Source of the DNA: Macrostomum lignano
Lineage: Eukaryota
Length of the DNA stretch: 64,000 bases
NCBI GenBank assembly: GCA_002269645.1
Contig: NIVC01001401.1
Span: forward strand, 138,761 to 202,760
Reading direction: 5' to 3'
How positions within the stretch are numbered: position 1 is the stretch's first letter; every line of letters begins with the position of its first letter. Under the pieces are notes generated by a model. The model was not told the origin of the DNA, searched no databases, and was given only the letters and a program-made list of their open reading frames with translations. Shown one piece after another: positions 1-61,292 of the stretch. The translations under genes were made by a program, and so were the position numbers.

Positions 1-2764
1 CCGCAGGATAGATCCAAGCGACGGAGGTGGGTGCTCGGGGTCTGGAGGGGGAATTCGAGGGGAATTTTTTATTCGGCTTAGATTAGGGCTAGTGGGGAAT
101 TGCTCAGTTTAGATAAGGGCTAGTGGGAAATTGCTCAGCTTAGATAAGGCTAGTGGGGCATTGCTCAGCTTAGATAAGAACTAGTGGGAAATTGCTCAGC
201 TTAGATAAGGGCTAGTGGGGCATTGCTCAGCTTAGATAAGGGCTAGTGGGGCATTGCTCAGCTTAGATAAGAACTAGTGGGAAATTGCTCAGCTTAGATA
301 AGGGCTAGTGGGGAATTGCGCAGCTTAGATAAGGGCTAGTGGGCATTGCTCAGCTTAGATAAGGGCTAGTGGGGCATTGCTCAGCTTAGATAAGGGCTAG
401 TGGGGCATTGCTCAGCTTAGATAAGAACTAGTGGGAAATTGCTCAGCTTAGATAAGGGCTAGTGGGAAATTGCTCAGCTTAGATAAGGGCTAGTGGGGCA
501 TTGCTCAGCTTAGATAAGAACTAGTGGGAAATTGCTCAGCTTAGATAAGGCTAGTGGGGCATTGCTCAGCTTAGATAAGGGCTAGTGGGGCATTGCTCAG
601 CTTAGATAAGAACTAGTGGGAAATTGCTCAGCTTAGATAAGGCTAGTGGGGAATTGCGCAGCTTAGATAAGGCTAGTGGGGCATTGCTCAGCTTAGATAA
701 GGGCTAGTGGGGCATTGCTCAGCTTAGATAAGGGCTAGTGGGGCATTGCTCAGCTTAGATAAGAACTAGTGGGAAATTGCTCAGCTTAGATAAGGGCTAG
801 TGGGGCATTGCTCAGCTTAGATAAGGGCTAGTGGGGCATTGCTCAGCTGTGATAAGAACTAGTGGGAAATTGCTCAGCTTAGATAAGGGCTAGTGGGGAA
901 TTGCGCAGCTAGTAAAAGCCATCAATAGAAATTGCTAAGATTAATAAGGACTCACGTACTCCAGTATATACGCCTTTGTGCTGAAAAATCTTTCTCACCA
1001 TGACAACCGCCCTGTAGCAACGCCAAGCATCAAAGCTGTTTGCCCCAGCGAAGGCTGGACTAACGGCGGCTCCACAGTCATCATTGTGGGAGAGAACTTC
1101 TTCGACGGATTGCAGGTGGTATTTGGCACCATGCTGGTCTGGAGCGAGGTGAGTTCAATTTATTTTCATGTAGCTCTCTCATTTAACAGTATTTTAACGG
1201 GACCTTTCGCACTCCTTTGGCAGATGATTACGTCACATGCCATCCGAGTGCAGACTCCACCGCGTCACATACCAGGCGTAGTGGAAGTGACCCTGTCCTA
1301 CAAGTCCAAGCAGTTTTGCAAGAACGCGCCCGGCGTCTTTGTTTACACTTGTAAGAATTTGCAGTTTGTGCTGCTTTCGTAGTCTCGTAGCTCTACTAAA
1401 AGTAGCTTTGATGGGTTGGCGCTCGTATGTCTTAACATATACATGTAAATTGCTGTGTAGTTAAGTTGTATTGGCCAGGGTTGAAGGCTTCAGTACACAT
1501 TCTCTCCCCCAGCCCTCATGGAGCCGACCATAGACTATGGATTAAAGCGACTATGCCAGCTCATCCGCAGTCTCTCTCCCTGTCCCCATTCTCTCCCCCA
1601 GCCCTCACGGAGCCGACCATAGACTATGGATTCCAGCGACTATGCCAGCTCATACGCAGTCTCTCTCCCTGCCCCCCATTCTCTCCCCCAGCCCTCACGG
1701 AGCCGACCATAGACTATGGATTCCAGCGACTGTGCAAGCTCATACCGAGACACCCGGGCGACCCAGACCGACTGCCGAAAGAGATTATTCTAAAGCGAGC
1801 CGCAGACGTGGCCGAAGCTCTGTACACCATGCCGAGGCAGCACCAGCAGATGCAGCAGGCGCAGCAGCAACAGCAGCAAATTCATCACCAGCAGGCGCCG
1901 CCTCCACCGCCACTCAGTCCGTCAATGCAGGCGGCCAACAACAACAGCTTCCATGTAAGTTCGCAAAAATACCTTGGCTCCGCATTAATATCCGATTTTA
2001 TTGCAATAAAAGTTCACTGTCAAGAATCGACACCATTCCGCAGTCTTACACCAGCCAGCTCGCGTCTCATCTGCTGACTCGGTGGCCGGTCAGTGGTCAT
2101 CCTCGGCTATGGCGGCCGCTGCCGCAGCTGCCGCCGCTGCAGCTTCGACGGACGAGTACAACCGGCCAGTTGGTGGGTCCAGACAGGGTCAGCTGCCTCA
2201 CCATCACCAGCAGCATCAGCAACAGCAGCATCTTCAGCAACAGCAGCAGCAGCAGCAGCATCATCACCATCATGCAGTGCAGCATCCGGGATATGCTGAT
2301 CTTCAGCAGCAGCAGCAGCACCACCACCACCAGACGTTGGCTTCAAACGGCGGATCGGAAGTTGGAAATAACAACGACAACGGCACAGCTGCAGCCGCCG
2401 CCGCAGCCGCCGCAGCCGCCGCAGCAGCCGCCGCAGCCTCCTATCCTACTGCCGCCTCAGGCAGTATGGGAATGCAGATGGGCATGCAGATGGGCATGCA
2501 GATGGGCGTACCAATGGGCATGCCGGCGGTTACTGGGCCCGGTCAGGACTTTCTGCACGGAGCGCGTAAGTTTTAGCCAGCAAAACTCTTTTGTTGCTAC
2601 TTATTGATGATTTGTTAGTAGTGTACATTGTATGTAGCACACCACTTTCTAAACATTTTGCAGGCATGTCCTCTCTGCCCTTCACCTCAGTCAACCCGTT
2701 CGCTCTGAGCAGCTCGGGGCCGACTTACCCTGGCGGCGGCTCCATCGCTTCGCCAGTAAAATGA
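1..2764 (+). CDS. coe: COE (collier/Olf1/EBF) transcription factor, 3' part (IPT/TIG domain, atypical HLH, low-complexity C-terminus); 5' end lies outside the window
   Basis: Exons <1-26, 1018-1148, 1224-1350, 1692-1954, 2094-2565, 2664-2764, all GT-AG and phase-consistent. Translation [85 protein letters not shown]...[44 protein letters not shown] matches the EBF/collier IPT and HLH signatures. Ends [12 protein letters not shown]...SPVK*. Confidence 0.96.
72..912. repeat. 31-bp minisatellite (AAGGGCTAGTGGGGCATTGCTCAGCTTAGAT)n in COE intron
   Basis: About 27 tandem copies with minor variants, read directly. Confidence 0.95.
1497..1745 (+). repeat. Tandem 89/90-bp duplication of COE splice acceptor plus HLH exon start (2 extra copies)
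   Basis: CATTCTCTCCCCCAG|CCCTCA(C/T)GGAGCCGACCATAGACTATGGATT recurs with exon starts at 1513, 1602 and 1692 (spacings 89 and 90 bp). Confidence 0.93.
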
Positions 2765-7990: not shown

Positions 7991-8408
7991 GCTGTAGAGT
8001 CGGGCTGTAGTAGGGTCGGGCTGTAGTAGGATCGGGCTGTAGTAGGGTCGGGCTGTAGTAGGGTCGGGCTGTAGTAGGGTCGGGCTGTAGTAGGGTCGGG
8101 CTGTAGTAGGGTCGGGCTATAGTAGGGTCGGGCTATAGTAGGATCGGGCTGTAGTAGGGTCGGGCTGTAGTAGGGTCGGGCTGTAGTAGGGTCGGGCTGT
8201 AGTAGGATCGGGCTGTAGTAGGGTCGGGCTGAAGTAGGGTCGGGCTGTAGTAGGGTCGGGCTGTAGTAGGGTCGGGCTGTAGTAGGGTCGGGCTGTAGTA
8301 GGGTCGGGCTGTAGTAGGGTCGGGCTGTAGTAAGGTCGGGCTGTAGTAGGTTCGGGCTGTAGTAGGATCGGGCTGTAGTAGGGTCGGGCTGTAGTAGGTC
8401 GGGCTGCA
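7991..8408. repeat. 16-bp minisatellite (GTAGTAGGGTCGGGCT)n
   Basis: About 26 tandem copies. Confidence 0.95.
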
Positions 8409-8834
8409 GTTGGAAGGCCTGTGGCTATAATCGCACTATTTCATATATCATGTCCCCTTCATCCTGTCCCCCAAGACAGCCCGTTGCAAGCTACAACGGA
8501 AGTCAATTTTGCTTAACAAGCAAAGAAGAAGCAAGCGTCTTCTTTCATCTGCTACTGAAGTAGATGGATATCAGACTGGTGTTTGTGATTACTTTTCCGA
8601 CAATAGAAAAGTTCGAACCAACATTCATGCATGTAGTGTAATTGCCGAAACTTTTTGTCCTGAAGAGGACGTCGTCAATGTTTAGTTTAAATTTAAACGA
8701 AAGAGTGAAGGAAAACATATTTATACATGTATTGTATACTTGGGTTGAAAAGATATGAAACAATTAGTGAAATTATCCATGCTAATTGTAGCTTTTGGTC
8801 AGTTTTTGGCAATCAAGGTAGGAGTTCCAAAAAT

Positions 8835-9793
8835 ATCAGAATCTCCCCCATCTCAGAATCTCCCCCATCTCAGAATCTCCCCTATCTCAGAATTTCCCCC
8901 ATCTCAGAATCTCCCCCATCTCAGAATCTCCCTTATTACAGAATCTCCCCCATCTCAGAATCTCCCCCATCTCAGAATCTCCCCATCTCAGAATCTCCCC
9001 CATCTCAGACTCTCCCCCATCTCAGAATCTCCCCATCTCAGAATCTCCCCCATCTCAGAATCTCCCTCATCTCAGAATCTCGATCCCCAATCTCAGAATC
9101 TCCCCCATCTCAGAATCTCCCCCATCTCAGAATCTCGATCCCCCATCTCAGAATCTCCCCCATCTCAGAATCTCCCCCATCTCAGAATCTCGATCCCCCA
9201 TCTCAGAATCTCCCCCATCTCAGAATCTCCCCCATCTCAGAATCTCCCCTATCTCAGAATCTCTCCCATCTCGGAGTCTCTCCCCATCTCAGAATCTCTC
9301 CCATCTCGGAGTCTCTCCCCATCTCAGAATCTCTCCCATCTCGGAGTCTCTCCCATCTCAGAATCTCCCCCATCTCAGAATCTCCCCCATCTCAGAATCT
9401 CTCCCATCTCGGAGTCTCTCCCCATCTCAGAATCTCTCCCATCTCGGAGTCTCCCCCATCTCAGAATCTCCCCCATCTCAGAATCTCCCCCATCTAAGAA
9501 TCTCCCCCATCTCAGAATCTCCCCCATCTCAGAATCTCCCCCATCTCAGAATCTCGATCCCCCATCTCAGAATCTCCCCCATCTCAGAATCTCCCCCATC
9601 TCAGAATCTCCCCCATCTCAGAATCTCTCCCATCTCAGAATCTCCCCCATCTCAGAATCTCCCCCATCTAAGAATCTCCCCCATCTCAGAATCTCCCCCA
9701 TCTCAGAATCTCCCCCATCTCAGAATCTCCCCCATCTCAGATCTCCCCCATCTCAGAATCTCACCCATCTAAGAATCTCCCCCATCTCAGAAT
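8835..9793. repeat. 16/17-bp minisatellite (ATCTCAGAATCTCCCCC)n
   Basis: Tandem copies with length variants; explains ORFs 8727-9497 and 8755-9918. Confidence 0.95.
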
Positions 9794-10436
9794 TTCCCTG
9801 TCCCCTTTCCGTGCTTCGCCAGCAGCGCACAGACATGGAGCCCAGTGCTTGCCCGATGCCAGCGCTCCTTGACCGCGAGCACTGTCCACTCGGCCACCGC
9901 GCAGCCCACCAAGGGTGATTAGATTCCTTTCCTCATCCATCCTTCTTCCTCAACAGCGCACCCTTAAACTGTTCCACTCCCCGGCAGCAAAGTGGCGGCA
10001 AACACAATTACTTCGCATCAGCCCCACCTCCCAAAACTCGCCCTGAGCAGCGAGAAGTTCTCCGTCAGTTTCCCTGCTGCCTCCGTTTGTCATTTTCTGT
10101 ACAACCAATTTATTCTGCCAGTGCTGCCGCTGCCGCTGCTCACAAGGGCTGCTCTAGAAAAAACCGACTGGAGTGAGCAAGGTAATCAATAAGGGAACTC
10201 TGTCTCGTCCTTCTTAACCGTTGCATCGGCCTTGGATCCACTTGATCAGCCATTTTGGTGGTCTACGATTATTCTGTTCCTGACAGGCGGCAGGCTGAGG
10301 CGTGAGATGGACATGGTGCGAGGCTGGAGATGGGGGCGGGGTGGGGGACCAAGATCTCTGGGTCTGATTTCGAAACCTCAATCCAAATCATGAGCTTATC
10401 GAACGCCAATAACATTAATGAGACTTAAAAAGCTTA

Positions 10437-10972: not shown

Positions 10973-11583
10973 TATATGCACGGCCATCAAGTTTCAACAG
11001 TAAAAATTCTGGCATCAGACTTCTATGCTTGAATTCCTATTTTGATCACTCAGGTTGCGGCGTTTCATTAGCACCGAGAAACAGTTTGCCAAATCTCGTA
11101 TGTTCCGCTTCAAGCGGGGCCTCAGGGAAGAAGCAGACGGCTGCTCCACCCACTCCAACAGCCTCCCCATCGTAACGTGGAACCGCATTCTAAGAAAATC
11201 CCGCTAAATACCGCTGCAAACGCAGAAAGGAAAAGAAAAAGAAAGAAACGAAAGAATTGGCAACATGAGAGAGAAAAAGATAACCGTCAAGCTTTGGCCG
11301 TCAAAATGCTTTCAACTGCAGCTTCCCTCATCAACCGCCCCCGGAGGTGCACCGAAGGCGTGCGTTTAGTTTCGCTTGGTGATTCGAATTACGGATTAAT
11401 GCACAATATCCATGCAATAAAAATGTGGAAATTCTTTTTCTTAGCTTCAAACCCCCAGGCGAAGCAGTGCCGGCGATTTTCCACCTGGGGCCCGTAAATG
11501 GAGGCGATTTTAAGAGAGAAATTATACTACCAACAGGGACCACTGTAAGTCACCTGGACTGGAAGCCAGAAGAGCGAAGTGTC

Positions 11584-12005
11584 CTAACCCTAACTAACCC
11601 TAAACCTAACCCAAAACCTAACCCTAAACCTAACGCTAAACCTAAACCTAAAGCTAAACCTAAACCTAACCCTAAAGCTAAACCTAAACTAAATCTAAAC
11701 CTAACTCTAAACATAACCCTAAACAAAACACTAAACCTAAACCAAAACTTCACCCTAAACCAAAACCTAACCCTAAACCAAAACCTAACCCTAAACCAAA
11801 ACCTAACCCTAAACCAAAACCTAACCCTAAACCAAAACCTAACCCTAAACCAAAACCTAACCCTAAACCAAAACCAAACCCTAAACCTAAACTTAAACCT
11901 TACCCTAAACCTAACCCTAACCCAAAGCCTAAACCAAAACCTAAACCTAAACCTTACCATAAACCTTACCCTAAACATAAACCGAAAACTAAATCTAACC
12001 CAAAC
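11584..12005. repeat. Degenerate telomere-like (CCCTAA/CCTAAA) array with 18-bp higher-order unit
   Basis: CTAACCCTAAACCAAAAC repeats and hexamer variants. Confidence 0.85.
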
Positions 12006-12564
12006 CCACGCGCAATTCAGTTTCTAAAATCAGTTCCCGACTTGATTCCATTTTGTGTCATTTGGCATCTTAAAATCTTTGGCATCTTTAAACTGGAGTT
12101 TGATCTCCAGTCCAAGTGGTTGTCAGGGGGATCCCTGATCTCTAAACTAGCGCACACCCTAACACACCAACTGTCTGACACCGAAGGCTGCCGTTCATCA
12201 TCCGGTCCCAGACTCCCGTCCAGCCTCCACCTTTCCCACCACATCCCTGTTCCCTACTGGCCTGCCCGCAGGGGGCCTCATTAAAGTAGATGGAAAAAAT
12301 GGCGCTGACGAGACTGGAAGAATTTAATTTATTCTGCATGCAATTTTTCATACTTTTATCCTCTAGATCCTGGTCTATCTTAGTCTCATCTATTGAATAA
12401 CCTGTTTTTTGGTTGTTGTCTCTCGCGCAATAGAATTCATAGAGATTGTCTTTGACTGTGCATGTGACTCGGCTGTGCGCTGCAACACTTCCAAGAGGTC
12501 ATCCCGCAGCTCCTGGTCTGATTGGCTGTCAGAAAGACAGAAAGACGCCCTTGTCAAAGAAACA

Positions 12565-16010: not shown

Positions 16011-19000
16011 ATGGTAACAAGCGACAGCGCCGCGAAAAACGACGCCGACAACAGTCGAAAGGCGGACGCGGAAGCAAAGCGGCGCGCCCGTGGCGCCGAG
16101 GCCGCCACAGCAATGGCAATGACGTCGGTGACCCTCGCGGAGACGTCGGCGACCCCGGCGGCTAAGCCGCATCGAGACGCCGCTGCTTCCGGTCGTCGGA
16201 GTAGACGGGGCGAGTCCAAGCACCGACGCAAGGATCAGAGACATCAGCAGCAACATCAGCACAGCTTCCTAGCTGCAGCGGTGGCGGCCACCGCCGCGGC
16301 CACAGTCGGGCTGCACTCGCTAGAAACGAAAGCGCCGATCGCGCACGACGATGAAGAAGACGAGGGGGCTGCGGCAGCGGCGGCAGCGGCTACGGGCTCA
16401 GACGCCGCCGCCCTGCTGGTTGCCGCTGCGTCAGGCGGCGGCGGTCCGACGCAAAACGGCGTCTCCGATGGGTGTAGAAGCGGCGTGAATACTCTGGCGA
16501 ATCCGAGTGCAGCTGAAGGTGACAGAACTCACTTTTGCGTACCTATGGGAGGCTCACCATTGTTACTCCATAGACTGGATTCCAGCGACCGTGCCAGCTC
16601 ATCCCCAGTCTCTCTCCCTGTCCCCATTCTCTCCCCCAGCCCTCACGGAGCCGACCATAGACTATGTATTCCAGCGACCGTGCCAGCTCATCCCCAGTCT
16701 CTCTCCCTGCCCCCATTCTCTCCCCCAGCCCTCACGGAGCCGACCATAGACTATGGATTCCAGCGACTATGCCAGCTCATCCCCAGTCTCTCTCCCTGCC
16801 CCCATTCTCTCCCCCAGCCCTCACGGAGCCGACCATAGACTATGGATTCCAGCGACTGTGCCAGCTCATCCCCAGTCTCTCTCCCTGCCCCCATTCTCTC
16901 CCCCAGCCCTCACGGAGCCGACCATAGACTATGGATTCCAGCGACTGTGCCAGCTCATCCCCAGTCTCTCTCCCTGTCCCTATTCTCTCCCCCAGCCCTC
17001 ACGGAGCCGACCATAGACTATGGATTCCAGCGACTATGCCAGCTCATCCCCAGTCTCTCTCCCTGCCCCCATTCTCTCCCCCAGCCCTCACGGAGCCGAC
17101 CATAGACTATGGATTCCAGCGACTATGCCAGCTCATCCCCAGTCTCTCTCCCTGCCCCCATTCTCTCCCCCAGCTCTCACGGAGCCGACCATAGACAATA
17201 GATTTATACATAGAGGTAGCTAAATTCTTAAGCTACTTTAAGTAGTTCAAAAGCAACTTTGAAAATGTGCCGCAACTTTTATTTTAGTTTTAATTGGCTC
17301 TCTGAAGTATATGCGCAGAACAGAACTATCTGCGGGTACAAAAGTGAACACTAGAGTCACCGTGACACTTAGGTTTGATTGGCACAGCTGATCGCTCAAT
17401 GGAGACCCTCAAGTTTTCATCAGCAAATGTCGTCGGTTCGTAGCAATTAAAAAATTTAAACGTTTATTTGGCCGCCAAAGGTGATAAAGAGGAATTAATA
17501 AACAAATATGATAAACTATAAACGAAACTAAACTAACTGCGTTTGGGCATGACGCCAATGGAATAAGCTGATTTTCAACTACGCTATTCCAAACGGATCT
17601 AGAATCTGCTTTAGGGATGGCAGTTTCCACTCCAGATATTCTACTAGTTATAGATCTCCATGGATAGCCTTTGATGATAGGTAATGTTAAATCATGGATA
17701 TATCTTCAGACCCAAGCCTAGCTTAGATGGTCCAGGCTCCGACCACATGCTGGGGTCTGTCCAAGCGCAAACTGGTCAAACCAATCTGCACCGCTGCTGC
17801 CACCCTGCTTGGGCTCACAGCACTGTTTCTGGACGCGGAGAGCAGAAATGCGAAAGTTTTGCCCCCTACTAACAATTTTAACTGCTTTGCCTGTCTTGTC
17901 TGCTTCAGTGCTTCAGTAAAGCAGATTCGCCAAAAGTTGTTAACTTTTGCGGCATCCCATCCGACAGTCCATCCCGGGGTCGCGCTAAGATATTATCCCC
18001 TTAGCTGGGCCAAGAAGACCGAAAAACTAGAATTTGGAGTGGCAACTCTTCTTTCCAGGCCAGTTCTTTGACACTAAATGAAACTGGTATCCCTTTATCC
18101 CAAGGGATCGGGATCGGGATCGGGATCGGGATCGGGATCGGGATCGGGATCGGGATCGGGATCGGGATCGGGATCGGGATCGGGATCGGGATCGGGATCG
18201 GGATCGAGACCGCGATTCGACAGAAGATCTGAGAGAAAAGTTTCTACTCCAAATTCTGGTTCTGGGTGTCCTTGGCTGGGGCCGTCCCTCAAGTAGACCA
18301 CACGGGTTGCCCGCCAATAAACCAGCGATCATGCAGTCCCGCTTCGCTTCATATATTAGCCATCCCCGTTATCCTCTACATGGATGCACTTTTCCTTTGT
18401 CTCTGCACACCGACCGTGCAGAGCCAGTCGGGGCCGCGTTGAAGGGCATCGAGGACGACAACCTGACAGGCGGCCTGCTCACCGAACGCGAGTGCCAGGC
18501 TCTGGTCCTGAGAAATCTGCATTACCGGCCTCGCCCATTCAGCGCCTTCACAACCTACAGCGACGCGATGCAGAGCGAAGACGACATCGAGGAGCTGCGA
18601 GCGACGGCCGGCCAGCGAACGTCCAACTACGACAATTTGCCTGCGTCAGCCGCTGCTGCAGCTGCTGCTGCTGCGGGTTCGCCGCCGGAAAGGCCGGTGC
18701 GAACGAGGCGTCAGGATGCGCAGACGAAGCTGCTGCTGGCGCCACTGGCCGCCGGCGGCGGGGTGACGTCTGCGGCTGCGGCGGAGACTGAAGATGACAG
18801 TGAGAGTCAGATTGACAGGGAGTTGAAGGGAGGGATGAAGGATGTGAAGATAAATCGAGATTCAAGAAGAGATTCGTAAATGGATTCGTGAATGGATTCG
18901 TGAATGGATTCGTGAATGGATTCGTGAATGGATTCATAAATGGATTCGTGAATGGATTCATAAATGGATTCGTGAATGGATTCGTGAATGGATTCGTGAA

Positions 19001-22000
19001 TGGATTCGTGAATGGATTCGTGAATGGATTCATAAATGGATTCGTGAATGGATTCGTAAATGGATTCGTAAATGGATTCGTGAATGGATTCGTAAATGGA
19101 TTCGTGAATGGATTCGTGAATGGATTCGTGAATGGATTCGTGAATGGATTCGTAAATGGATGCGTGAATGGATTCGTGAATGGATTCGTGAATGGATTTG
19201 TGAATGGATTCGTGAATGTATTCGTGAATGGATTCGTGAATGGATTCGTGAATGGATTCGTGAATGGATTCGTGAATGGATTCGTGAATGGATGCGTGAA
19301 GGGATTCGTGAATTGATTCGTGAATGGATTCGTGAATGGATTCGTGAATGGATTCGTGAATTGATTCGTGAATGGATTCGTGAATGGATTCGTGAATGGA
19401 TGCGTGAAGGGATTCGTGAATGGATTCGTGAATGGATTCGTGAATGGATTCGTGAATGGATTCGTGAATGTATTCGTGAATGGATTCGTGAATGGATTCG
19501 TGAATGGATTCGTGAATGGATTCGTGAATGGATGCGTGAAGGGATTCGTGAATTGATTCGTGAATGGATTCGTGAATGGATTCGTGAATGGATTCGGCAA
19601 AAGGTCAAGAAAAAGAGGTGACCCTTCAGTCCAGCTTAAATCCTGCCGCCGCTCGCAGAGGCGGCAGACACCGATGGCAAGAAGGCCGCCGCCGACCAGG
19701 CGACAGACTCGCCCGAGAAGCAGAAAAATCAGCAGCAGCAGCAGCAGCAGCAGAACGACGGCAAGCCGCCCACTCGGCCGAAGGTGTCGAAGTGGAAGCG
19801 ACGAAGGCGTCGCTGCGTCTCCTGCCTGAAGACCTCCGTGGCCTTCCTGTTCTCGCACATCGGCCTGTGCCTGCTGGTGATTGGCTACACCCTGTCAGGG
19901 GCTTACCTGTTCGTCTACCTGGAGCACGATCGGTCGGTCATGGACAATCGGATGTACACGGAGAGCGTGGCTCAGACGAGAATTCATATGAGGTTTGAGA
20001 CTGGGACTGGGAAGGAAGCTGCTGAGAGCTTGCCCTAAGAAAATATTGATAATCTGAGCCACTAGATTATTTAAGAATAGATCTAAAAATTGAGACAAGA
20101 GAGACTGGATCTATAGACTAGAATAGGAAGACTATGCGAGACTAGATCTGGGAAACTCGATATACGAGACTAGATCAGGAAGACTAGATCTAAAGACTAA
20201 GAGCTGAGAGTCTAAATCTGAGAGACTAGATCATTGAGACTAGATCTTAGAGACTAAATAAGGGAGACTAAATCTGTGAGACTTGATAATAAAGACTAAG
20301 TCTACGAGACTTGATATGAAAGACTAGATCTGAGAGACTAAATCTGAGAGACTAGATCTGAGAGACTAGATCTGAGAGACTAGATCTGAGAGACTAGATC
20401 TGAGAGACTAGATCTGAGAGACTAGATCTGAGAGACTAGATCTGAGAGGCTAGATCTGAGAGACTAGATCTGAGAGACTTGATCTGAGAGGCTAGATCTG
20501 AGAGACTAGATCTGAGAGACTAGATTTGAGAGACTAGATCTGAGAGACTAGATCTGAGAGACTAGATCTAAAAGACTAGATCTAAGAGACTAGAACTCAG
20601 ACTCTACACAATCAACCCTGTCTATCGATAGAAGCTTACAAAAATCAAGAACTTCGAAAGTTGAACACGCACTCTATTCAGGCCTTTCATACCATCAGTT
20701 GCAAGATCCCTGCTTCTCAGGAATGTATTCTTTCCTCCTAGCCAGCCATGCGGGGTGAACCTCAGATTAATAATTAACTGAGTAACCCCAGCAGCTGTTG
20801 CGGCAGAGAACGGGGATGGAGTAGAGGTGCCGGAAAAACAAACTAAAATTCGATTCGCACTCAAGCAGATTTTCGGCAAACAAAGGAAGAGAGGAGAGTC
20901 TCAGTGAACATGAATAATTCACTGATGCGGCGCTTAGTATTGCACTTGAGCTCGTAGGATCAGCAGTGGGAGGTCTTGGTAATGCGCGCTCAAGACCTCA
21001 TTGCCAATCCACTGTAATTGCAGTGCACTAACTGAACTCGACCAATTAGAGAAATTCTTGCTTTTAATTGCGGTAGGAAATCATGTTAATGTTTTTCTGG
21101 GCCAAATTTATGGATGTTACTCATCTAGCTTGTTGATTACTCATCTATAGCTTGTAGATCACTCATATATAGCTTGTAGATTACTCATATATAGCTTGTA
21201 GATTACTCATATATAGCTTGTAGATTACTCATATATAGCTTGTAGATTACTCATATATAGCTCGTAGATTACTCATATATAGCTTGTAGATTACTCATAT
21301 ATAGCTTGTATATTACTCATATATAGCTTGTAGATTACTCATATATAGCTTGTATATTACTTATCTAGTCTGTAGATTACTCATCTAGCTACAACTGCCC
21401 AACCCCACAGCGGCAACATGACCCAACCAGTCGTCGAGATGATCCAGGAGCTCAAGTCGGACTTTGAGCAGTTGTTTCACGTTCTAGAAGACATGGCAGA
21501 TGAGTCCTACAAGAAGCTGCTCAACATCAGCCAGATGCTGAGTTCGAGTCGGCTCCGACTGGCCGACGCCGTGCGCGAAGTTGGCGACGCAAATTCGCAG
21601 CTGTTGCACCAGCTTCAGGGGGACTTCACCCAGCATGAGGACAGCATCGAGACGCAGGTGGGGGTCCTCGGCAGCCTCCTGTCCAACATCAGCTGTCCGC
21701 CGTGCCCGTTTGGGCATCCGGGTGGCAACCGGTCTGGCAGCACCGGTCGCAGCATGCAGGACTACACTAACATGGTGCACAGGATCCGACAGCAGCTGGA
21801 TAAGTAAGCGGGTCCGCGACAACTGACTGCCCAAGAATAAACTCTAACCTAAAATCTAAGCTAAACCCTAACCTAAACCCTATAACCTAAACCCAATAAC
21901 CTACACCCTAACCAAAACCCTATATCCTAAACCCTATAACCTAAACCCTAACCTACACCTAACCTAAACCCTATAACCTAAACCCTATAACCTAAACCCT

Positions 22001-25000
22001 AACCTAAACCCTATAACCTAAACTCTAACCTAAACCCTAACCTTAACCATAACTTTAGCCCTAACCCTAACCTAAATCGTAGACAGAAGAGAATAAGCAT
22101 CGTATAAGCAATAAAATCGATTAAAAAATCGATCGAAAAAAAATCTATATTAACAAATCAATATTAAAATATCGATCATGAAAAAACGAGACTGAATGAA
22201 TCAATGAGTAAAAAAACGGATTATTAGGTCAATAGTCCATTTATTATTAATAGAAAATTACTATATATATATAAGTAACAGACAACTGAAAATCCGAAAA
22301 TGCTTCATCTTCAGCAATCAAATTTTCTATAAAAAATTCAGATCTCAGCTCGGCATCCGCAAGGAGCTTCGGCAGGCTGTCAACTCGGCGAAGGCTCGCA
22401 TCCGAGAGGAGGTGTTCCAGCTGTTCAATCATTCAACCGCCTACCGGCGCCAGGTGCTGCAGGTGCAGGCCTCTTTAGAATTGATGCAGGCCAGCCTCTA
22501 CAATTTCACCAGCGTTGCCCACCTCGAGTTGGAGAACAATCGAGTTCTGCTAGAGAAAATCAAAGGCGGTAAAGATTATTCCACTGTTGGCACCAATACT
22601 ATGATGGCCAGGTACAATTATTCGGCCACTTTGCGTACCTGGGCGCTGAAACTGGAGGAGTCTGTTTACAGCTACGCCATGCGGGGCTGGAGTCGGCCGG
22701 ACGAGGACAAGCCGGGTGTCAATCAGACTATCTGGACTTTTCCTGGCGCTCTGCTGTACGCCATCACCATAGTGACTACCATTGGTGAGCGGCGCTTGTG
22801 ACTATTGCTGATGTACTGATTTTCTACTTGTATCCATACATGCTTCTGACTCTGTGATCTCATCTCTCCACACTCCTGACTCTGTGATCTAGTCTCTCCA
22901 CACTCCTGACTCTGCGATCTAGTCTCTCCACACTCCTGACTCTGTGATCTAGTCTCTCCACTCTTCTGACTCTGTGATCTAGTCTCTCTACTCATATCGC
23001 TCTGCGATCTAGTCTCTCCACTCTCCTGGCCCCGAGATCTAGTCTCTCCACTCTTCTGGCTCCGTGATCTAATCTCTCAACTATTCTGACTCCGTGATCT
23101 AGTCTCTCCACTCTTCTGGCTCCGTGATCTAATCTCTCAACTATTCTGACTCCGTGATTCTAGTCTCTCCACTCTCCTGGCCCCGAGATTTAGTCTCTCC
23201 TCTTCAGATTTTCCCTCTCTCTTTTAGTCTTGCTTTGCGAATTGGCGGTGGGAAGTTTATAATAAGAGCGCATAGTGTACTTTTGCTGTGAGACTACATG
23301 TATGTCATTCATCCTGGGAGTTCTGGCTGTCCCCCCTCCGAAGTTGTGCATCCAATTCGCAGGACGTCTAGCTTGGCTAATCGGTTTTCTGTGTTAATCA
23401 GAGCGATCATTAAATTTTTATGCGTTGCCAGGGCACTGATGTCTCAACTGATCTTTCTAGCATATCTATGCATCTGTGAGTTTATGTATCCATGCAATCC
23501 ATGCATCTATACTTCTAGGTATATGCATCTATCTAGGGGTGAGCGTCGGACTCACGACTGAAAGGTCGGGGGTTCGATTCTCGAGCCACCTCGGAACAAT
23601 TTGTGTCCTTGAGCAAGACATTAGCTGGGGTAATTGAGGGTGTGTGTGGCGACCCCCCCTCCCCAGTCCTTAGACTGAACAGGCGTACGCAGCCTTCAGA
23701 TGTGCTGCGCATCTAGACATCTATATCAATCTATATATCCATGCATCTATAAATCTATGCATCTATATTATTACCTAGGAAGTGTCACCACGAGCTGAAA
23801 TACGTGTAGAATACGAGCCCATACCGTATATCATGACCATGGACACGGCAGAGTGGACTTCAATTACAATCTGCAATAATTGCCTGCAAGCAATTGGGGA
23901 AATCCCATTTTTGAATTCGCATCGGTTAACCAGCTGAGTAAGCCCCAAAAAAATTGGTCCCAGTGTAATCTGTATGCTTTCAATTAAAGATTTCTGAAGC
24001 GAAACTGCAGATGATTATGCACAGACTTAGCCAAGCAAATGGTATCGATCAGTGCAGTTACCTCGCTCAGTTGCCTACAGTGCCAGCCAGCCAGATTGGT
24101 CAGCCATGCCTTCACACTGATGACCTCTTCGGGAGGCGGATCACCGTTCTTTTATGATCATTTTTCTCTTTTTCTGTGTCTGTCTCTTCCATATCTCCTC
24201 TGGTTTGAAAGTCTTCCCAATTGCGAGATTAAACTGTCGAGGGCTATTGAACCTAAAAATCATAAAAATGCATGGCACAACTCGACTCCTTGGTTTCATG
24301 AATCCATTTTATCATCTCTGTTACAAATACTGTCACATAGTCAGCTAAGAATGACAAAATAGATTCATAAAACCAATGAGCCGAGCCATGCAATTTTAAT
24401 GAATTTCAGGCACAGGACATGTACAAATGTACGTAGAATAAAACATTAAGCTTTATGAATATCAATAGAGCTATAACAAAGGCACAACATATCAAAAGAT
24501 GAACATTGGGTCTGCCTCCTGCTGAAAAAAGATTTTCTTGGAAAAATTTTTTCCAAGAAACGAGATTTCCCGTCCTTGTACTTGAGTAGTCCTTGCTGAG
24601 AATTTTATTTCTAAGAAATTCACTACAATGCCCCCCTCCGTTTTTCTACTATTGGATTTTGGACTGCTGTTATCGTTTAGTCCTGGCCTCAGTCGTAGAT
24701 TTTCAAGCTAAATTGGCCAATTCCAAGAAAACAGGTCCGACAGTCGAGACGGATTCGATCTTAATTAAGAGGAAAGCCAACATTCTGGCTAGCTGTGCAA
24801 CTATCGGTAAAACCCAAGTTGCGCGGGGCCGCATCCCAGCGGGATTGGGGGGGGGGGGGGCATGGACAAACCAGAGCTGTGCGTTCTGCAGTTTGCCGTT
24901 GTCCTTCAAATCTCGTCCCGATGCAAAACCAGCATGCAGTACCTGTGTTCTGCGCTAGTTTTGGCCTCTCATGGTTCGCTCACGGTCAGAGAGAGAAGGG

Positions 25001-26750
25001 GCCACGAATTTCAAACTGTTTCTAAGAAAAGGAAACAGGTCGAGTTGGTTATTAAAAGATTCAAGGGCACTGAGGGAGCGGAGAGGCAGATTCAAGGGCA
25101 CTGAGGGAAGGGAGAGGAAGATTCAAGGACACTGAGGGAAGGGAGAGGCAGATTCAAGGGCACTGAGAGAGCGGAGAGGCAGATTCAAGGGCACTGAGGG
25201 AGCGGAGAGGCAGATTCAAGGACACTGAGGGAGCGGAGAGGCAGATTCAAGGACACTGAGGGAAGGGAGAGGCAGATTCAAGGGCACTGAGGGAGCGGAG
25301 AGGCAGATTCAAGGACACTGAGGGAAGGGAGAGGCAGATTCAAGAACACTGAGGGAGCGGAGAGGCAGATTCAAGGACACTGAGGGAAGGGAGAGGCAGA
25401 TTCAAGGACACTGAGGGAAGGGAGAGGCAGATTCAAGGGCACTGAGGGAGCGGAGAGGCAGATTCAAGGACACTGAGGGAAGGGAGAGGCAGATTCAAGA
25501 ACACTGAGGGAGCGGAGAGGCAGATTCAAGGACACTGAGGGAAGGGAGAGGCAGATTCAAGGACACTGAGGGAGCGGAGAGGCAGATTCAAGGACACTGA
25601 GGGAGCGGAGAGGCAGATTCAAGGACACTGAGGGAGCGGAGAGGCAGATTCAAGGACACTGAGGGAGCGGAGAGGCAGATTCAAGGACACTGAAGAAACA
25701 GAATGGCAGATTTCTTACTATTTACGGACTACTTACGGACGCATTCAAACACAAAGGGCTATTGCTACTACAAGTAGTGCAAATTTTAATTAATTGTATA
25801 AAATTGGTCCCAAACTGGCTGCCATCGCAGGCTACGGCCACGTGGCGCCCAAAACGGTTGCCGGCCGGCTGTGCACCATCTTCTACGCCATGGTGGGCAT
25901 CCCGCTGATGCTGCTATGCCTGCACAACCTCGGCTCCTTCCTGGCTGACGTGTTTCGCCTCTGCTACCAGCACTGCTGCCTCCGTCTGTGGCGCAGACGA
26001 CGGATGCGCCGGCTGGCCCGCCATCACGAGGCCATCAGCAGTCGCAGTCGGCGGGGCCGGGTGCGCGCCTTTGACCAGCTGTCGGAGATCATGCCCATCT
26101 CCAGCCGCTACCGGTCCCGACGGAGCAACCGTAGCGGCGCTACAGTCCGGCGCGGCGGCGGCGGCGGCAGCGGACGGAGCGGTCTGTCGACGGCTACGAC
26201 GGCCGGCGGGCGACACGGGGCGGCGGAGGCGACGCTGGGCGGCAACGGTGGATCGCCGCCAGCGATGATGTCGCGTCGACGAATCTTCCAGCTGGCCGAC
26301 CCGAGCACCGGGCAGACGCTGGACCTGTGCGTGCTACCGCCGGCGTCGGTGGGAACCGCCGGGCGGGCCGCCAGCTCCTACGCCGCCTCGACGCCAGTCA
26401 GCAGCGTCGAGGATCTCGGCGAAGTAATCCGCGTGCCGGTCTGGCTGACCCTGACGGTGTTCTGCATCTACATCCTGACCGGGGCGGTGCTGTTCTACTC
26501 CTGGGAGCAGTGGGGCTTCATGGACTCCGTCTATTTCGTGTTCATCACCCTGACAACCATCGGGCTGGGTGACTTCGTGCCCGGCATGCAAGAGTCGTCC
26601 TGGACTGACGAGGCCAAGCCAATCACCTGCGGCCTGTACCTGCTGTTCGGCCTGGCCATGATCGCCATGTGCTTCCAGCTGATGCAGGAGGAGGCCAAGG
26701 ACAAGGTGAAATCGTTCGGCAGAAAGATCGGACTGCTGGACGATGGCTGA
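16011..26750 (+). CDS. Two-pore-domain potassium channel (K2P, invertebrate TWK/TWIK-like), about 991 aa, with greatly enlarged M1-P1 extracellular loop
   Basis: Exons 16011-16518, 18422-18799, 19659-19992, 21411-21803, 22342-22784, 25831-26750 (2976 nt, phases 1,1,2,2,1 all consistent, GT-AG). M1 [24 protein letters not shown]; P1 [17 protein letters not shown]|GYGHVAPKT; M2 [19 protein letters not shown]; M3 [21 protein letters not shown]; P2 [25 protein letters not shown]; M4 [18 protein letters not shown]. Exons 1-2 are assigned by phase and composition only, so they are less certain. Confidence 0.93.
16569..17197 (+). repeat. About 7 copies of an 89-bp unit derived from the COE acceptor/HLH exon, inside K2P intron 1
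   Basis: Unit CCAGCGACTATGCCAGCTCATCCCCAGTCTCTCTCCCTGCCCCCATTCTCTCCCCCAGCCCTCACGGAGCCGACCATAGACTATGGATT is nearly identical to 1497-1745; it translates [18 protein letters not shown]. Confidence 0.95.
18104..18205. repeat. (GGGATC)17 microsatellite
   Basis: Perfect hexamer repeat. Confidence 0.97.
18870..19594. repeat. 12-bp minisatellite (GTGAATGGATTC)n filling K2P intron 2
   Basis: About 60 copies; source of several spurious ORFs. Confidence 0.96.
20323..20590. repeat. 14-bp minisatellite (TAGATCTGAGAGAC)n, with degenerate copies back to about 20100
   Basis: Tandem copies read directly. Confidence 0.92.
21113..21390. repeat. 22-bp minisatellite (TTACTCATATATAGCTTGTAGA)n
   Basis: About 12 copies. 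Confidence 0.92.
21843..22075. repeat. Degenerate telomere-like (AACCCT/AACCTA) array in K2P intron 4
   Basis: CCCTAACCTAAACCCTATAA-type repeats. Confidence 0.82.
22843..23200. repeat. 30-bp minisatellite (CTGACTCTGTGATCTAGTCTCTCCACACTC)n
   Basis: About 12 diverging copies immediately after the exon 5 donor. Confidence 0.9.
23532..23690 (+). mobile_element. tRNA-derived SINE fragment
   Basis: tRNA-like head with B-box GGTTCGATTC (23571-23580), followed by TGTGTCCTTGAGCAAGACA, which resembles the conserved central motif of CORE/V/Meta-type SINEs. Confidence 0.65.
25057..25693. repeat. 31-bp minisatellite (GGCAGATTCAAGGACACTGAGGGAGCGGAGA)n
   Basis: About 20 copies. Confidence 0.95.
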
Positions 26751-38565: not shown

Positions 38566-41500
38566 ATGCGAAGTCTAGCAGAGTTTACGAATAATTCTCA
38601 GCTGTGTGGCTTTATTCTGCTGCTGACTGTTGCTGGCTGCATCTTGGTTCTTGCACTATTTATCATTCTCTGCGTGCCACGCTGCGTTAAGGCCAATAAA
38701 TACAGGGTAATTATTGCTTTATTGATTCAGAGCTCATATTGAACGTTTGTCACCACGATTGATAATGGCAATAAATGTGCAAAATTCTATTTTGAACAGG
38801 TTTTCACACCGCAATCGGAGTCGCCAGTTCAGACGCAGCCCACTACACCGACATTTCCTCTTCTGCCTCCGTCAATCGAAGCATCTTCGGCAACGCCAGC
38901 GTTGGACTCCAGCAACAGTAGTAACTTTGGTGGCAGTCACGGCAGTCGATGGCCAAGCAGCCAGCTGTTGCTGGATCCGACCGCCGCAATGCTGGAGCCG
39001 GCGGCCAGATTCCTGATACCGCGAGTCCGGTTAGCAACGCCTGAGGCTGCTCCGCCATCAGGAGTCATCCTGGGTGAGCTGGGGCGAGGAGTCTGGGACC
39101 CCTAGTTAATAACGTGCCGGTGGCAGTTTGTTTCAAGCACTGCAGGGGGTACTGTAGAAAGGGGTACTGGTCAGACATTGATGGACAAGTCAGTGTAGGG
39201 TCAAGGATTGTAGGGTCAGGCACTGTAAGGTCAGGCACTGTAGGGTCAGGTATTGTAGGGTCAGGCATTGTAGGATCAGGCACTGTAGGGTCAGGCACGG
39301 TAGGGTCAGGCACTGTAGGGTCAGGCTATGTAGGGTCAGGCAATGTAGGGTCAGGCATTGTAGGGTCTGGCATTGTAAGGTCAGGCACTGTAGGGTCAGG
39401 TATTGTAGGATCAGGCATTGTAGGATCAGGCACTGTAGGGTCAGGCACGGTAGGGTCAGGCACTGTAGGGTCAGGCAATGTAGGGTCAGGCATTGTAGGG
39501 TCAGGGACTGTAGGGTCAGGCATTGGTGGGTAGACTGTTACAATATCTTGAGCACTGACTCTGCATACCAACTCACTAAAACACACGCGACCGGAAGCTC
39601 CGGACCCGCTGCGCATGGACCGGAAGCACCTGTACTTCCTGAGCGAACTCGGCCCGGCCTGGTTCGGCCCGTAGTTCGAGCCGACTGCACCCGCTACGGC
39701 GAGAGCCTCCGCGACCGGGTCATCGTCCGGCTGCTCACCTGCGGCGACAGTCGAGGCCGGAATAGGCGGCATTTCTTGGCCGATTTGCAGGCCTATCGGG
39801 AGTGCTCGGCTGATCCGTGCGTCCTTCGGCTGCTAGCGATCTGCCCGGAGGAGCCCTGCTTGGCCGTGATGGAGGCCGCGGCTGTGAGGGGCTTCAATTC
39901 TGACCTGGATATAGTTAGTTAGCCAGTTAGTTTTGTCACAAGAAACTTTGGGGACCTCCGCAAACCAGCGTGGCAGTTGACCCGCAGCCCGCAAAGCAGG
40001 CGCACGCTATCAAAGGGTGCAGAGCTCATCTTAGAGAACACTCAGGGCCTTGGAATTTGTGTGGCCACATGCTGAGGTACCGAGGTACTTGGGCGAGAGA
40101 GTTAGACTGAGATTACTGAGATTACTCTGCACTGTATGGGCAGCTCTGAGAATGAATTTAGTTTATGGTCCTACAGGTATAACGGGTTGATATCCCTCAG
40201 GTGTTAACTGGTGGTTGATCTGTCTCAGGTGGTAACTGGTTGATCTGTCTCAGGTGGTAACTGGTGGTTGATCTGTCTCAGGTGGTAACTGGTTGATCTG
40301 TCTCAGGTGGTAACTGGTGGTTGATCTGTCTCAGGTGATAACTGGAGGTTGATCTGTCTCAGGTGTTAACTGGTGGTTGATCTGTCTCAGGTGTTAACTG
40401 GTTGATCTGTCTCAGGTGGTAACTGGTTGATCTGTCTCAGGTGTTAACTGGTTGATCTGTCTCAGGTGGTAACTGGTGGTTGATCTGTCTCAGGTGTTAA
40501 CTGGTGGTTGATCTGTCTCAGGTGTTAACTGGTTGATCTGTCTCAGGTGGTAACTGGTTGATCTGTCTCAGGTGGTAACTGGTTGATCTGTCTCAGGTGG
40601 TAACTGGAGGTTGATCTGTCTCAGATGTTAACTGGTTGATCTGTCTCAGGTGTTAACTGGTTGATCTGTCTGAGGTGTTAACTGGTGGTTGATCTGTCTC
40701 AAGTGGTAACTGGTTGATCTGTCTCAAGTGGTAACTGGTTGATCTGTCTCAGGTGGTAACTGGTTGATCTGTCTCAAGTGGTAACTGGTTGATCTGTCTC
40801 AGGTGGTATCTGGTTGATCTGTCTCAGGTGTTAACTGGAGGTTGATCTGTCTCAAGTGGTAACTGGTTGATCTGTCTCAGGTGTTAACTGGAGGTTGATC
40901 TGTCTCAAGTGGTAACTGGTTGATCTGTCTCAGGTGGTAACTGGTGGTTGATCTGTCTCAGGTGGTATCTGGTTGATCTGTCTCGGGTGTTAACTGGTTG
41001 ATCTGTCTCAGGTGTTAACTGGAGGTTGATCTGTCTCAAGTGGTAACTGGTTGATCTGTCTCAGGTGGTAACTGGTGGTTGATCTGTCTCAGGTGGTAAC
41101 TGGTTGATCTGTCTCAGGTGGTAACTGGTTGATCTGTCTCAGGTGTTAACTGGTGGTTGATCTGTCTCAGGTGGTAACTGGTTGATCTGTCTCAGGTGGT
41201 AACTGGTTGATCTGTCTCAGGTGGTAACTGGTTGATCTGTCTCAGGTGGTAACTGGTTGATCTGTCTCAGGTGGTAACTGGTTGATCTGTCTCAGGTGGT
41301 AACTGGTTGATCTGTCTCAGGTGGTAACTGGTTGATCTGTCTCAGGTGGTAACTGATGGTTGATCTGTCTCAGGTGGTAACTGGTTGATCTGTCTCAGGT
41401 AGTAACTGGTTGATCTGTCTCAGGTGGTAACTGGTGGTTGATCTGTCTCAGGTGGTAACTGGTGGTTGATCTGTCTCAGGTGTTGACTGGTGGTTGATCT

Positions 41501-61215: not shown

Positions 61216-61292
61216 GCGGGATTTCTAAGCACCTAAAATCCTGCAAAATAACAAATCCCCCAAAAACGGCATATGGGATTTTTTAGGATTTT

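What the first reader, a model, noticed from the sequence alone, without database searches (positions are those of the whole stretch)
16569..17197. A COE splice-acceptor/HLH-exon fragment has been amplified into a 7-copy minisatellite inside a different gene 15 kb away
Seen: the 89-bp unit is almost identical to the COE intron/exon junction repeat at 1497-1745, and encodes [14 protein letters not shown], the start of the COE HLH. It sits in the same orientation 50 bp downstream of the K2P exon 1 donor. The array starts and ends at the same point in the unit (CATAGAC...ATAGAC). Inference: a small piece of a transcription-factor gene was excised or copied, amplified (for example by rolling-circle replication of an 89-bp circle or by repeated template switching), and inserted ectopically. 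This shows the source sequence of a new minisatellite, and could be the general mechanism behind the private arrays throughout this genome.
Basis: partly seen in the sequence, partly recalled or inferred. Interest (0 to 1): 0.85.

Follow-up and report, generated by a model that had tools for sequence, protein, structure and literature searches.

The report
Exon-junction minisatellite copied to a neighbouring gene
In this flatworm sequence (almost certainly Macrostomum lignano), an 89-base piece spanning a splice acceptor and the start of a conserved exon of the COE transcription-factor gene was duplicated in place, then copied 15 kb downstream, where it now forms a 7-copy tandem array: a clear case of a minisatellite with a traceable source, made by ordinary DNA repair or replication errors.

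Summary
An 89-bp x 7.2 array lies at 16568-17204. It is 95-97% identical to an 89-bp x 2.8 array at 1498-1745 and occurs nowhere else in the window. The last COE copy is the real acceptor and the start of the COE helix-loop-helix (HLH) exon (Pfam COE1_HLH, E=1e-30), so the sequence came from COE.

All non-terminal COE copies and all seven downstream copies share the same unit-to-unit junction and a derived Lys-to-Gln change. The 89-bp period therefore arose once. The downstream array's edges lie inside the exon-derived part, which points to copying from an already tandem COE repeat.

The downstream array is 7 whole units bounded by an 8-bp direct repeat, CCATAGAC. Its flanks are unique, with no transposon, retrocopy or segmental-duplication marks. 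Variants shared between units rule out a single amplification followed only by point mutation.

My best reading is a nearby, microhomology-mediated template switch or ectopic repair copy, followed by unequal exchange within the array. Reintegration of a circle is the main rival.

"K2P exon 1" is plausible (GC-rich open frame, compatible splice phase) but has no homology support. None of the other 34 arrays has a single-copy source in the window, so the proposed general mechanism is unsupported. This is a neat new example of a known process, of moderate to low interest.

The parts
1224..1350 (+). COE exon encoding the C-terminal half of the IPT/TIG domain ([42 protein letters not shown]). It ends in phase 1; the donor GT is at 1351-1352.
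   Evidence: Pfam TIG E=2e-11. Identical, apart from one R/V difference, to M. lignano UniRef A0A1I8IWB3 (P0056). Sequence read.
1351..1691 (+). COE intron of 341 bp. Its last 194 bp are repeat copies.
   Evidence: Donor GTAAGA at 1351 and acceptor CCCCCAG ending at 1691.
1498..1745 (+). Source array: 2.8 copies of the 89-bp unit across the COE acceptor. The structure is S0-f-S0-f-S0, where S0 is ~70-74 bp of native junction and f is a 15-19 bp pyrimidine filler. Unit C2 is 90 bp.
   Evidence: TRF; unit table.
1511..1512 (+). Pseudo-acceptor AG number 1. Its use would add 179 nt, shift the frame and reach TAG after 37 codons.
1600..1601 (+). Pseudo-acceptor AG number 2. Its use would add exactly 90 nt, an in-frame 30-aa insertion ([30 protein letters not shown]).
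   Evidence: continuous ORF 1436-2074.
1692..1954 (+). Genuine COE HLH exon ([44 protein letters not shown]...).
   Evidence: Pfam COE1_HLH 1-44/44, E=1.3e-30; COE/EBF homologues across animals.
16011..16519 (+). Putative first coding exon of the downstream gene: a GC-rich, low-complexity open frame starting [11 protein letters not shown]... The donor is AAG|GTGACA, phase 1. Assignment to the K2P gene is inferred.
   Evidence: Open frame; GC 0.66-0.69 against 0.37-0.46 in the flanks; no Pfam match, and the combined-exon query found no homologue.
16568..17204 (+). Ectopic 89-bp minisatellite, 7.2 copies (K1-K7 plus a terminal CCATAGAC). Each unit carries the COE polypyrimidine tract, the AG and 58 nt of exon-derived sequence. 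AG dinucleotides are at 16638, 16727, 16816, 16905, 16994, 17083 and 17172.
16568..16575 (+). Left copy of the 8-bp direct repeat CCATAGAC that bounds the array. The adjacent unit K1 lacks the next 2 nt (TA).
17189..17196 (+). Right copy of the 8-bp direct repeat CCATAGAC. The predicted empty site is TTGTTACTCCATAGACAATAGATTT.
   Evidence: Flanks show no significant similarity to the unit.
18422..18799 (+). Putative exon 2 of the downstream gene. Its acceptor at 18420-18421 is phase-compatible with the 16519 donor. This would place the array in a 1.9-kb first intron.
   Evidence: inference; no homology support.
25794..26747 (+). Two-pore-domain K+ channel coding block containing both pore domains. 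It identifies the downstream gene.
   Evidence: Pfam Ion_trans_2, 2 stretches, E=2.7e-28.

Best explanation
The 7-copy array at 16568-17204 is a DNA-level ectopic copy of a tandem duplication that first arose at the acceptor of the COE HLH exon. Step 1 (shown by sequence): about 70-74 bp spanning the 3' end of the intron and the first 58 nt of the exon was tandemly duplicated in place, with a 15-19 bp pyrimidine filler that is itself a diverged copy of the polypyrimidine tract. This fixed an 89-bp period and left 2.8 copies. Step 2 (inferred): a broken or stalled 3' end in the first intron or 5' region of the neighbouring K2P gene, ending in ...CCATAGAC, paired with the same 8 bases in the COE repeat 15 kb away. 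It copied repeat units, through synthesis-dependent strand annealing or replicative template switching (FoSTeS/MMBIR type), and returned through the same microhomology. The result is a whole number of units bounded by CCATAGAC. Step 3 (inferred from the variant pattern): copy number and variant distribution were then reshaped by slippage, unequal exchange and perhaps occasional gene conversion with the COE array. No function is implied. A side effect is that the COE gene now has three tandem 3' splice sites, and the neighbouring gene has seven sense-oriented copies of a proven 3' splice site.
For: The COE origin is secure. The unit's coding part is the start of the Pfam COE1_HLH domain and is conserved across animals. 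The period arose once: the junction and filler sequence and the derived C at unit position 29 (AAG Lys to CAG Gln) are shared by C1, C2 and K1-K7 but absent from the real exon. Direction: the COE array's edges are the native intron and exon, whereas both K-array edges lie in the middle of the exon-derived part at CCATAGAC. That is expected when an existing tandem repeat is copied in an arbitrary phase set by microhomology. The two are distinct loci and not misplaced reads: unit position 39 is C in 7/7 K units and G in both COE copies, and each array has private variants. Homology stops at the array edges. The flanks are unique in the window and lack inverted repeats. Positions 24, 25 and 55 carry variants shared by several K units, and the position 25 and 55 variants are also found in COE copies. 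My rough estimate of that coincidence is p~0.03-0.1. This indicates heterogeneous templates and/or later exchange. Proximity: a random reinsertion into a ~760-Mb genome (size from PMC5730564) would land within 15 kb of its source with probability ~4e-5, which favours a distance-dependent mechanism. Microhomology-mediated spread of satellite repeats to new loci is documented in Drosophila (PMC7403614).
Against: Nothing in one sequence separates template switching from integration of a circular multimer at the same microhomology; both predict n units plus an 8-bp direct repeat. The 8-bp repeat is weak evidence, because a remainder of 0-16 bp out of 89 has roughly 10-20% chance probability. The proximity argument suffers from ascertainment, since only 64 kb could be inspected and genome-wide copy number is unknown. 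Parsimony on unit variants needs one homoplasy under either direction of transfer; K retains the exon-like C at position 39 and G at position 25 in some units, so it did not descend from today's C1/C2 as they now stand. The origin of the filler is not demonstrated. The array could not be confirmed against reads or a second assembly.
Confidence: 0.55

Rival explanations
1. Circle route. Recombination between adjacent COE repeat units releases a unit-multiple circle (89 bp or n x 89 bp). The circle is amplified by rolling-circle replication, or is already multimeric, and integrates by a single crossover at the 8-bp CCATAGAC microhomology in the K2P intron.
For: A whole number of units flanked by a duplicated 8-mer is exactly what single-crossover integration of a circle gives. 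eccDNA made of exact multiples of tandem repeats is widespread (PMC3225859, abstract). It has also been proposed as a vehicle for satellite spread (PMC7403614).
Against: An 89-bp monomer is very small for a double-stranded circle (inference). One-shot amplification predicts initially identical units, yet three sites carry variants shared by several units, two of them matching COE variants. A free circle has no evident reason to land 15 kb from its source in a ~760-Mb genome. No circle data are available.
Confidence: 0.2
2. Reverse direction. A single ~74-bp COE junction fragment first landed in the K2P intron, became tandem there, and two units were later transferred back into COE by gene conversion.
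For: K units keep exon-like states at position 39 (all 7) and position 25 (4 of 7), where C1/C2 are derived. The COE array length of 248 bp equals one native S0 plus two whole units.
Against: The K array should then begin and end at the S0 boundaries, but both ends lie inside the exon-derived part at CCATAGAC. C2 keeps the exon-like A at position 37, which no K unit has. This route also needs an extra long-range event.
Confidence: 0.1
3. Both arrays belong to a dispersed, possibly transposon-borne repeat family that once captured a COE fragment. The K2P copy came from a third locus or a mobile element.
For: Genome-wide copy number could not be checked. M. lignano is rich in repeats, with 15% simple/tandem repeats and 21% LTR elements (PMC5730564). 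Several other array pairs in the window have related units.
Against: No terminal inverted repeats and no poly(A). Flanks are unique in the window and homology ends at the array edges. No further copy exists in 64 kb. No array-encoded peptide appears in 5.8 billion database proteins, and there is no match in metagenome contigs.
Confidence: 0.08
4. Assembly artefact: COE-repeat reads were wrongly placed or chimerically joined into the K2P intron.
For: The genome is repeat-rich, partly duplicated and known to be hard to assemble (PMC5730564).
Against: There is a fixed difference between the arrays (position 39) and K-specific variants in an ordered pattern. The flanks are clean and unique, and the window has no N gaps. 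A 637-bp array is easily spanned by long reads (inference).
Confidence: 0.05

Closest known systems
Spread of euchromatic satellite repeats to new loci by microhomology-mediated repair, interlocus gene conversion or eccDNA reintegration (Rsp-like/1.688 on the Drosophila simulans-clade X; Sproul et al. 2020, PMC7403614)
   Same: A tandem repeat appears at a new locus with a short microhomology at the junction (7 bp there, 8 bp here). Later expansion occurs within the locus by unequal exchange. The candidate mechanisms are the same (MMEJ, FoSTeS/MMBIR, SDSA template switch, eccDNA).
   Different: Here there is one event and not dozens. No pre-existing satellite sits at the target. The repeat is a minisatellite of identifiable genic origin (splice acceptor plus conserved exon start), and the source lies only 15 kb away.
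Minisatellite birth by tandem duplication or slippage between short direct repeats (Haber and Louis model, cited from my own knowledge; microhomology-mediated tandem duplication, PMC8639346; polymerase-theta-dependent tandem duplications, PMC13031629)
   Same: The COE-side array looks like a small tandem duplication that then gained a third copy. A junctional filler resembling nearby sequence is typical of templated insertions in end-joining repair (own knowledge).
   Different: The duplicated segment straddles a functional 3' splice site of an essential-looking domain exon. A second array exists at a distance.
Expansion of tandem repeats during double-strand-break repair by synthesis-dependent strand annealing (yeast work by Paques, Leung and Haber 1998; own knowledge, not checked here)
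   Same: This would explain how a 2.8-copy template yields a 7-copy product in one or a few repair events, and why units look like mosaics of template variants.
   Different: The process is demonstrated for allelic or plasmid templates with long homology. Here invasion would rest on about 8 bp.
Tandem alternative 3' splice sites created by acceptor duplication
   Same: Three identical PPT-AG modules sit 89 and 90 nt apart upstream of the COE HLH exon, and the middle one is in frame.
   Different: Use of the upstream sites is untested. Known tandem acceptors such as NAGNAG are a few nucleotides apart, not 90.

Membership tests
Minisatellite (tandem repeat, unit ~10-100 bp) | Head-to-tail copies of a 10-100 bp unit | tested here: met
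   Period 89, 7.2 copies, 97% matches, no indels; unit table.
Minisatellite (tandem repeat, unit ~10-100 bp) | Copy-number polymorphism between individuals or strains | not testable with these tools
   No second M. lignano assembly or reads could be reached.
Array derived from the COE/EBF HLH exon junction | The unit contains sequence homologous to the functional exon and its acceptor | tested here: met
   95-97% identity to 1498-1745. The real exon matches Pfam COE1_HLH at E=1.3e-30. The unit translates to [14 protein letters not shown].
eccDNA / rolling-circle-derived array | Whole number of units bounded by a duplicated (micro)homology | tested here: met
   7 units plus CCATAGAC at both ends. 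The same structure is predicted by a template switch, so this does not discriminate.
eccDNA / rolling-circle-derived array | Units initially identical, with variation explained by independent point mutations | tested here: not met
   Positions 24, 25 and 55 have variants shared by 2-4 units; positions 25 and 55 match COE variants.
eccDNA / rolling-circle-derived array | Matching circles detectable in cells | not testable with these tools
   This needs Circle-seq or 2D gels.
Transposon-borne gene-fragment capture (Pack-type DNA elements, Helitrons, MITEs with internal arrays) | Terminal inverted repeats, hairpin or target-site duplication, and flanks repeated elsewhere | tested here: not met
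   No inverted repeats around the array. The flanks match only low-complexity GC/CAG tracts in the window. Genome-wide status is unknown.
Retrocopy (RNA-mediated) | Intron absent, poly(A) tail, target-site duplication | tested here: not met
   The unit includes about 31 nt of intron (polypyrimidine tract plus AG). No A-tract is present.
Segmental duplication of the COE locus | Homology extends into the flanks | tested here: not met
   Flank-versus-unit and flank-versus-window alignments are no better than shuffles.
Intron of the two-pore K+ channel gene | The array lies between two exons of one transcript that also contains the pore domains | tested here: inconclusive
   Pore domains are at 25794-26747. 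The upstream GC-rich ORF ends at a phase-1 donor at 16519, compatible with the acceptor at 18420-18421. There is no Pfam or homologue support and no RNA data.

The most novel reading that the evidence does not exclude
In Macrostomum lignano a distance-dependent template-switching process may routinely seed new minisatellites from nearby sequence, including other arrays and even exon junctions. This would explain why about a third of this gene-rich window consists of private arrays. The COE-to-K2P pair would then be a young event caught before divergence. The seven sense-oriented copies of a working 3' splice site could also act as cis- or SL-trans-splicing decoys that change expression of the channel gene.
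Probability: 0.1. Interest if true: 0.7.

Novelty: new member of a known kind. Interest (0 to 1): 0.38.

Why it matters
The source of a minisatellite unit can rarely be named. Here the source is a splice acceptor plus the first 19 codons of a deeply conserved exon. The intermediate (the 2.8-copy duplication at the source) and the product (7 copies, 15 kb away) sit in the same 64 kb, so the order of events and the junctions can be read directly. This gives a concrete, testable empty-site prediction (TTGTTACTCCATAGACAATAGATTT). It also offers a natural experiment on how a gene tolerates three tandem acceptors (COE) and how a neighbouring gene tolerates seven intruding acceptors, in an animal that also uses trans-splicing. 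It does not reveal a new mechanism or function.

Tried and rejected
1. I looked for other M. lignano sequence to test for an empty site and for genome-wide copy number. The only M. lignano relative found (P0056, UniRef) has no contig on record. A search with the array-encoded 87-aa peptide found only weak COE HLH hits from other organisms. A combined query of the putative K2P 5' exons found nothing. An exact 32-mer search of metagenome contigs found nothing.

2. Transposon or segmental-duplication origin was rejected on the flanks.

3. I thought the left flank (GGAGGCTCACCAT) might be a decayed extra unit. Local alignment against a unit dimer was no better than shuffles, so I dropped the idea.

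4. Single-copy sources for the other 34 arrays: none in the window.

5. An Rfam scan of the whole window found no RNA family.

6. Literature searches for Macrostomum minisatellites or satellites found only the general statements that 15% of the genome is simple/tandem repeat and that assembly is difficult. The 2015 genome paper was not held.

7. Parsimony ordering of the units could not polarise the C-to-K versus K-to-C direction by substitutions alone, because each direction needs one homoplasy. The direction rests on the array boundaries.
Full report
**What is there.** Tandem Repeats Finder reports two arrays of period 89: 7.2 copies at 16568-17204 (97% matches, no indels) and 2.8 copies at 1498-1745. 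I read both regions directly and cut them into units.
- The downstream array has units K1-K7. K1 is 87 bp because it lacks a TA; the others are 89 bp. After K7 comes one more CATAGAC and then unrelated AT-rich sequence.
- The upstream array is a partial copy (C0, from 1498), then C1 (89 bp), C2 (90 bp, one extra C), and C3, which runs on into unique coding sequence.
- A 32-mer and a 34-mer from the unit match only these two places in the 64-kb window, with zero matches expected from shuffles.
- The arrays are 95-97% identical over 180 bp, lie on the same strand and are 14.8 kb apart.

**Organism and genes.**
- The exons at 1224-1350 and 1692-1954 encode the end of the IPT/TIG domain and the whole COE helix-loop-helix (HLH). 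Pfam gives TIG at E=2e-11 and COE1_HLH positions 1-44 of 44 at E=1.3e-30.
- A protein search returns COE/EBF/collier proteins from across animals. The closest is a Macrostomum lignano UniRef entry (P0056), identical to the window's TIG exons and to a downstream exon at about 2650-2750 except for one R/V difference. The window is therefore M. lignano or a very close relative, possibly a paralogous copy.
- Published descriptions of that genome report 15% simple and tandem repeats, 21% LTR elements, heavy redundancy and about 760 Mb (PMC5730564).
- Downstream, the ORF at 25794-26747 has two Ion_trans_2 pore domains (E=3e-28), so a two-pore K+ channel gene is present.
- Its phase (1) fits an acceptor at 18420-18421 in front of the next GC-rich open block.
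- It has no Pfam match. A combined query joining it with the putative exon 2 and the 19640-region exon found no database homologue. Placing the array in K2P intron 1 is therefore likely but unproven.

**Anatomy of the unit.** Each unit has three parts:
- 58 nt identical or nearly identical to the start of the HLH exon (CCCTCACGGAGCCGACCATAGACTATGGATTCCAGCGACT[A/G]TGCCAGCTCAT..);
- a 15-19 nt pyrimidine stretch (TCTCTCTCCCTGCCCC);
- the native end of the intron (CATTCTCTCCCCCAG).

The pyrimidine stretch occurs in neither flank of the COE array. It is about 83% similar to the adjacent polypyrimidine tract, and TRF reports a 19-bp sub-repeat there. It therefore looks like filler templated from next door when the first duplication formed; that last point is inference.

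**Relationships between copies.**
- The real exon has AAG (Lys, conserved in COE proteins) at unit position 29. C1, C2 and all seven K units have CAG.
- The unit-to-unit junction and the filler are shared by C1, C2 and K1-K7. The 89-bp period was therefore invented once, and both arrays descend from that one tandem repeat.
- K3 and K6 are identical and differ from C2 at only two positions.
- Position 39 is a fixed difference: C in 7/7 K units, G in C1 and C2. Together with private variants in each array and the absence of gaps, this argues against misplaced reads.
- Substitutions alone do not polarise the transfer, because either direction needs one homoplasy. K keeps exon-like states at positions 39 and 25; C2 keeps the exon-like A at position 37.
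- The boundaries do polarise it. The COE array is bounded by native intron and native exon. Both edges of the K array fall inside the exon-derived part at CCATAGAC. That is expected if an existing tandem repeat was copied in a phase set by the target. It is not expected if a single fragment first landed there and then became tandem.

**The ends.** The K array is seven units bounded by CCATAGAC at 16568-16575 and 17189-17196. Beyond these, the flanks are no more similar to the unit than shuffled sequence. They match nothing else in the window except low-complexity tracts, and they carry no inverted repeats. The predicted empty site is TTGTTACTCCATAGACAATAGATTT. An 8-bp direct repeat around a whole number of units fits two models equally well: a template switch that entered and left through the same microhomology, and single-crossover integration of a circular multimer. 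A remainder this small would occur by chance about 10-20% of the time, so it is suggestive only.

**Mechanism.** The following origins are excluded by tests here:
- a retrocopy, because intron sequence is included and there is no poly(A);
- a segmental duplication, because there is no flank homology;
- a transposon, within the limits of the window.

A single amplification from an 89-bp monomer followed only by point mutation is also excluded. Three positions (24, 25, 55) carry variants shared by two to four units, often adjacent ones (K1-K2, K4-K5, K6-K7). The variants at positions 25 and 55 are the same as those segregating among the COE copies; my rough estimate for that coincidence is 0.03-0.1. 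The array was therefore built from heterogeneous templates, or reshaped by unequal exchange or conversion, or both.

The source and product are 15 kb apart in a ~760-Mb genome. A free fragment or circle would land that close with probability about 4e-5. This favours a distance-dependent process such as SDSA with an ectopic template or FoSTeS/MMBIR. One caveat applies: only 64 kb could be inspected, so genome-wide copies cannot be excluded.

I put about 0.55 on local microhomology-mediated copying followed by in-array exchange, about 0.2 on the circle route, and smaller weights on reverse direction, a dispersed family and an artefact. [quoted passage not shown] There, 7-bp and 4-bp microhomologies, interlocus conversion, FoSTeS/MMBIR and eccDNA were all considered (PMC7403614). 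eccDNA consisting of exact multiples of tandem repeats is well known (PMC3225859).

**Consequences for the genes (inference, untested).**
- The COE intron now ends in three identical PPT-AG modules, at 1511-1512, 1600-1601 and 1690-1691.
- Using the first adds 179 nt and hits a stop.
- Using the second adds exactly 90 nt, because C2 gained one C, and keeps the frame. This would insert 30 residues ahead of the HLH.
- The seven K-array acceptors are in sense orientation. The putative upstream exon also ends in phase 1, so splicing to any of them would read the COE frame and stop within 37 codons.

Thirty-six arrays with period of at least 12 cover 37% of the window. Apart from the 89-bp pair, none has a copy of its unit outside itself, so nearby single-copy sources are not a general feature. 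Unit-against-unit comparison does show more related pairs than chance. Five pairs reach p<5e-4 where 0.3 are expected among 630 comparisons:
- two neighbouring inverted arrays share an exact 13-mer (20138-20594 and 22843-23200; 0 of 20,000 shuffles);
- two adjacent arrays share 15 of 16 bases (60709-61226 and 61716-63170).

So arrays may sometimes seed arrays locally, which is worth a genome-wide test.

**Verdict.** The feature is real, and its source and order of events are traceable. It was produced by known classes of repair or replication error, and there is no evidence of function. It is a new member of a known kind, of moderate to low interest. The surrounding density of minisatellites in gene space is arguably the more unusual feature.

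Noticed in passing
window 1-64000: Thirty-six minisatellite arrays (period 12-95 bp, 0.1-3.3 kb each) cover about 37% of this gene-containing window, mostly in introns or between exons. This is well above the 15% genome-wide figure published for M. lignano, and I found no paper describing it.
   Followed up: partly
20138-20594 vs 22843-23200; 60709-61226 vs 61716-63170; 7994-8410 vs 39194-39522; 8836-9798 vs 60709-61226: Pairs of otherwise 'private' arrays have related units: an exact 13-mer GAGAGACTAGATC in inverted orientation, AACATCCTCA(G)ATTGG in adjacent arrays, and GTAGGGTC[G/A]GGC 31 kb apart. Five pairs reach p<5e-4 against 0.3 expected, which suggests arrays can seed new arrays nearby.
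   Followed up: partly
1600-1707 (unit C2): The middle COE repeat unit is 90 bp, not 89, because of one extra C in the pyrimidine tract. Use of the pseudo-acceptor at 1600-1601 would therefore give an in-frame +30-aa isoform instead of a frameshift. Whether this reflects selection or chance is unknown.
   Followed up: partly
1224-1350 and about 2650-2750, compared with P0056: The only M. lignano COE model in the database (UniRef A0A1I8IWB3) joins the FVYT exon directly to the [12 protein letters not shown] exon, skipping the HLH and Gln-rich exons. It has the conserved Arg (GRFVYT) where the window has Val (GVFVYT). The window may be a paralogous or homeologous copy, or the published model may have been derailed by the repeated acceptor.
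   Followed up: no
11583-12007 and 21838-22072: Two interstitial telomere-like arrays, with mixed CCTAAA / CCCTAA (TTTAGG / TTAGGG) units, lie 10 kb apart inside the gene region.
   Followed up: no
unit positions -1 to 12, e.g. 16744-16756: CCATAGACTATGG, which encodes T-I-D-Y-G, is a 6+1+6 palindrome. Both boundaries of the downstream array, and the 2-bp deletion in K1, fall at its centre. A small hairpin-prone site may have guided the breakpoints.
   Followed up: no
18104-18206: A perfect (GGGATC)x17 array with 100% matches lies in the same putative intron as the 89-bp array. Its perfection suggests very recent expansion.
   Followed up: no
16519 and 1350: Both the COE exon upstream of the source repeat and the putative exon upstream of the ectopic array end in phase 1. 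Any splicing into the ectopic units would therefore read the COE frame ([22 protein letters not shown]...) before a stop at codon 37.
   Followed up: partly
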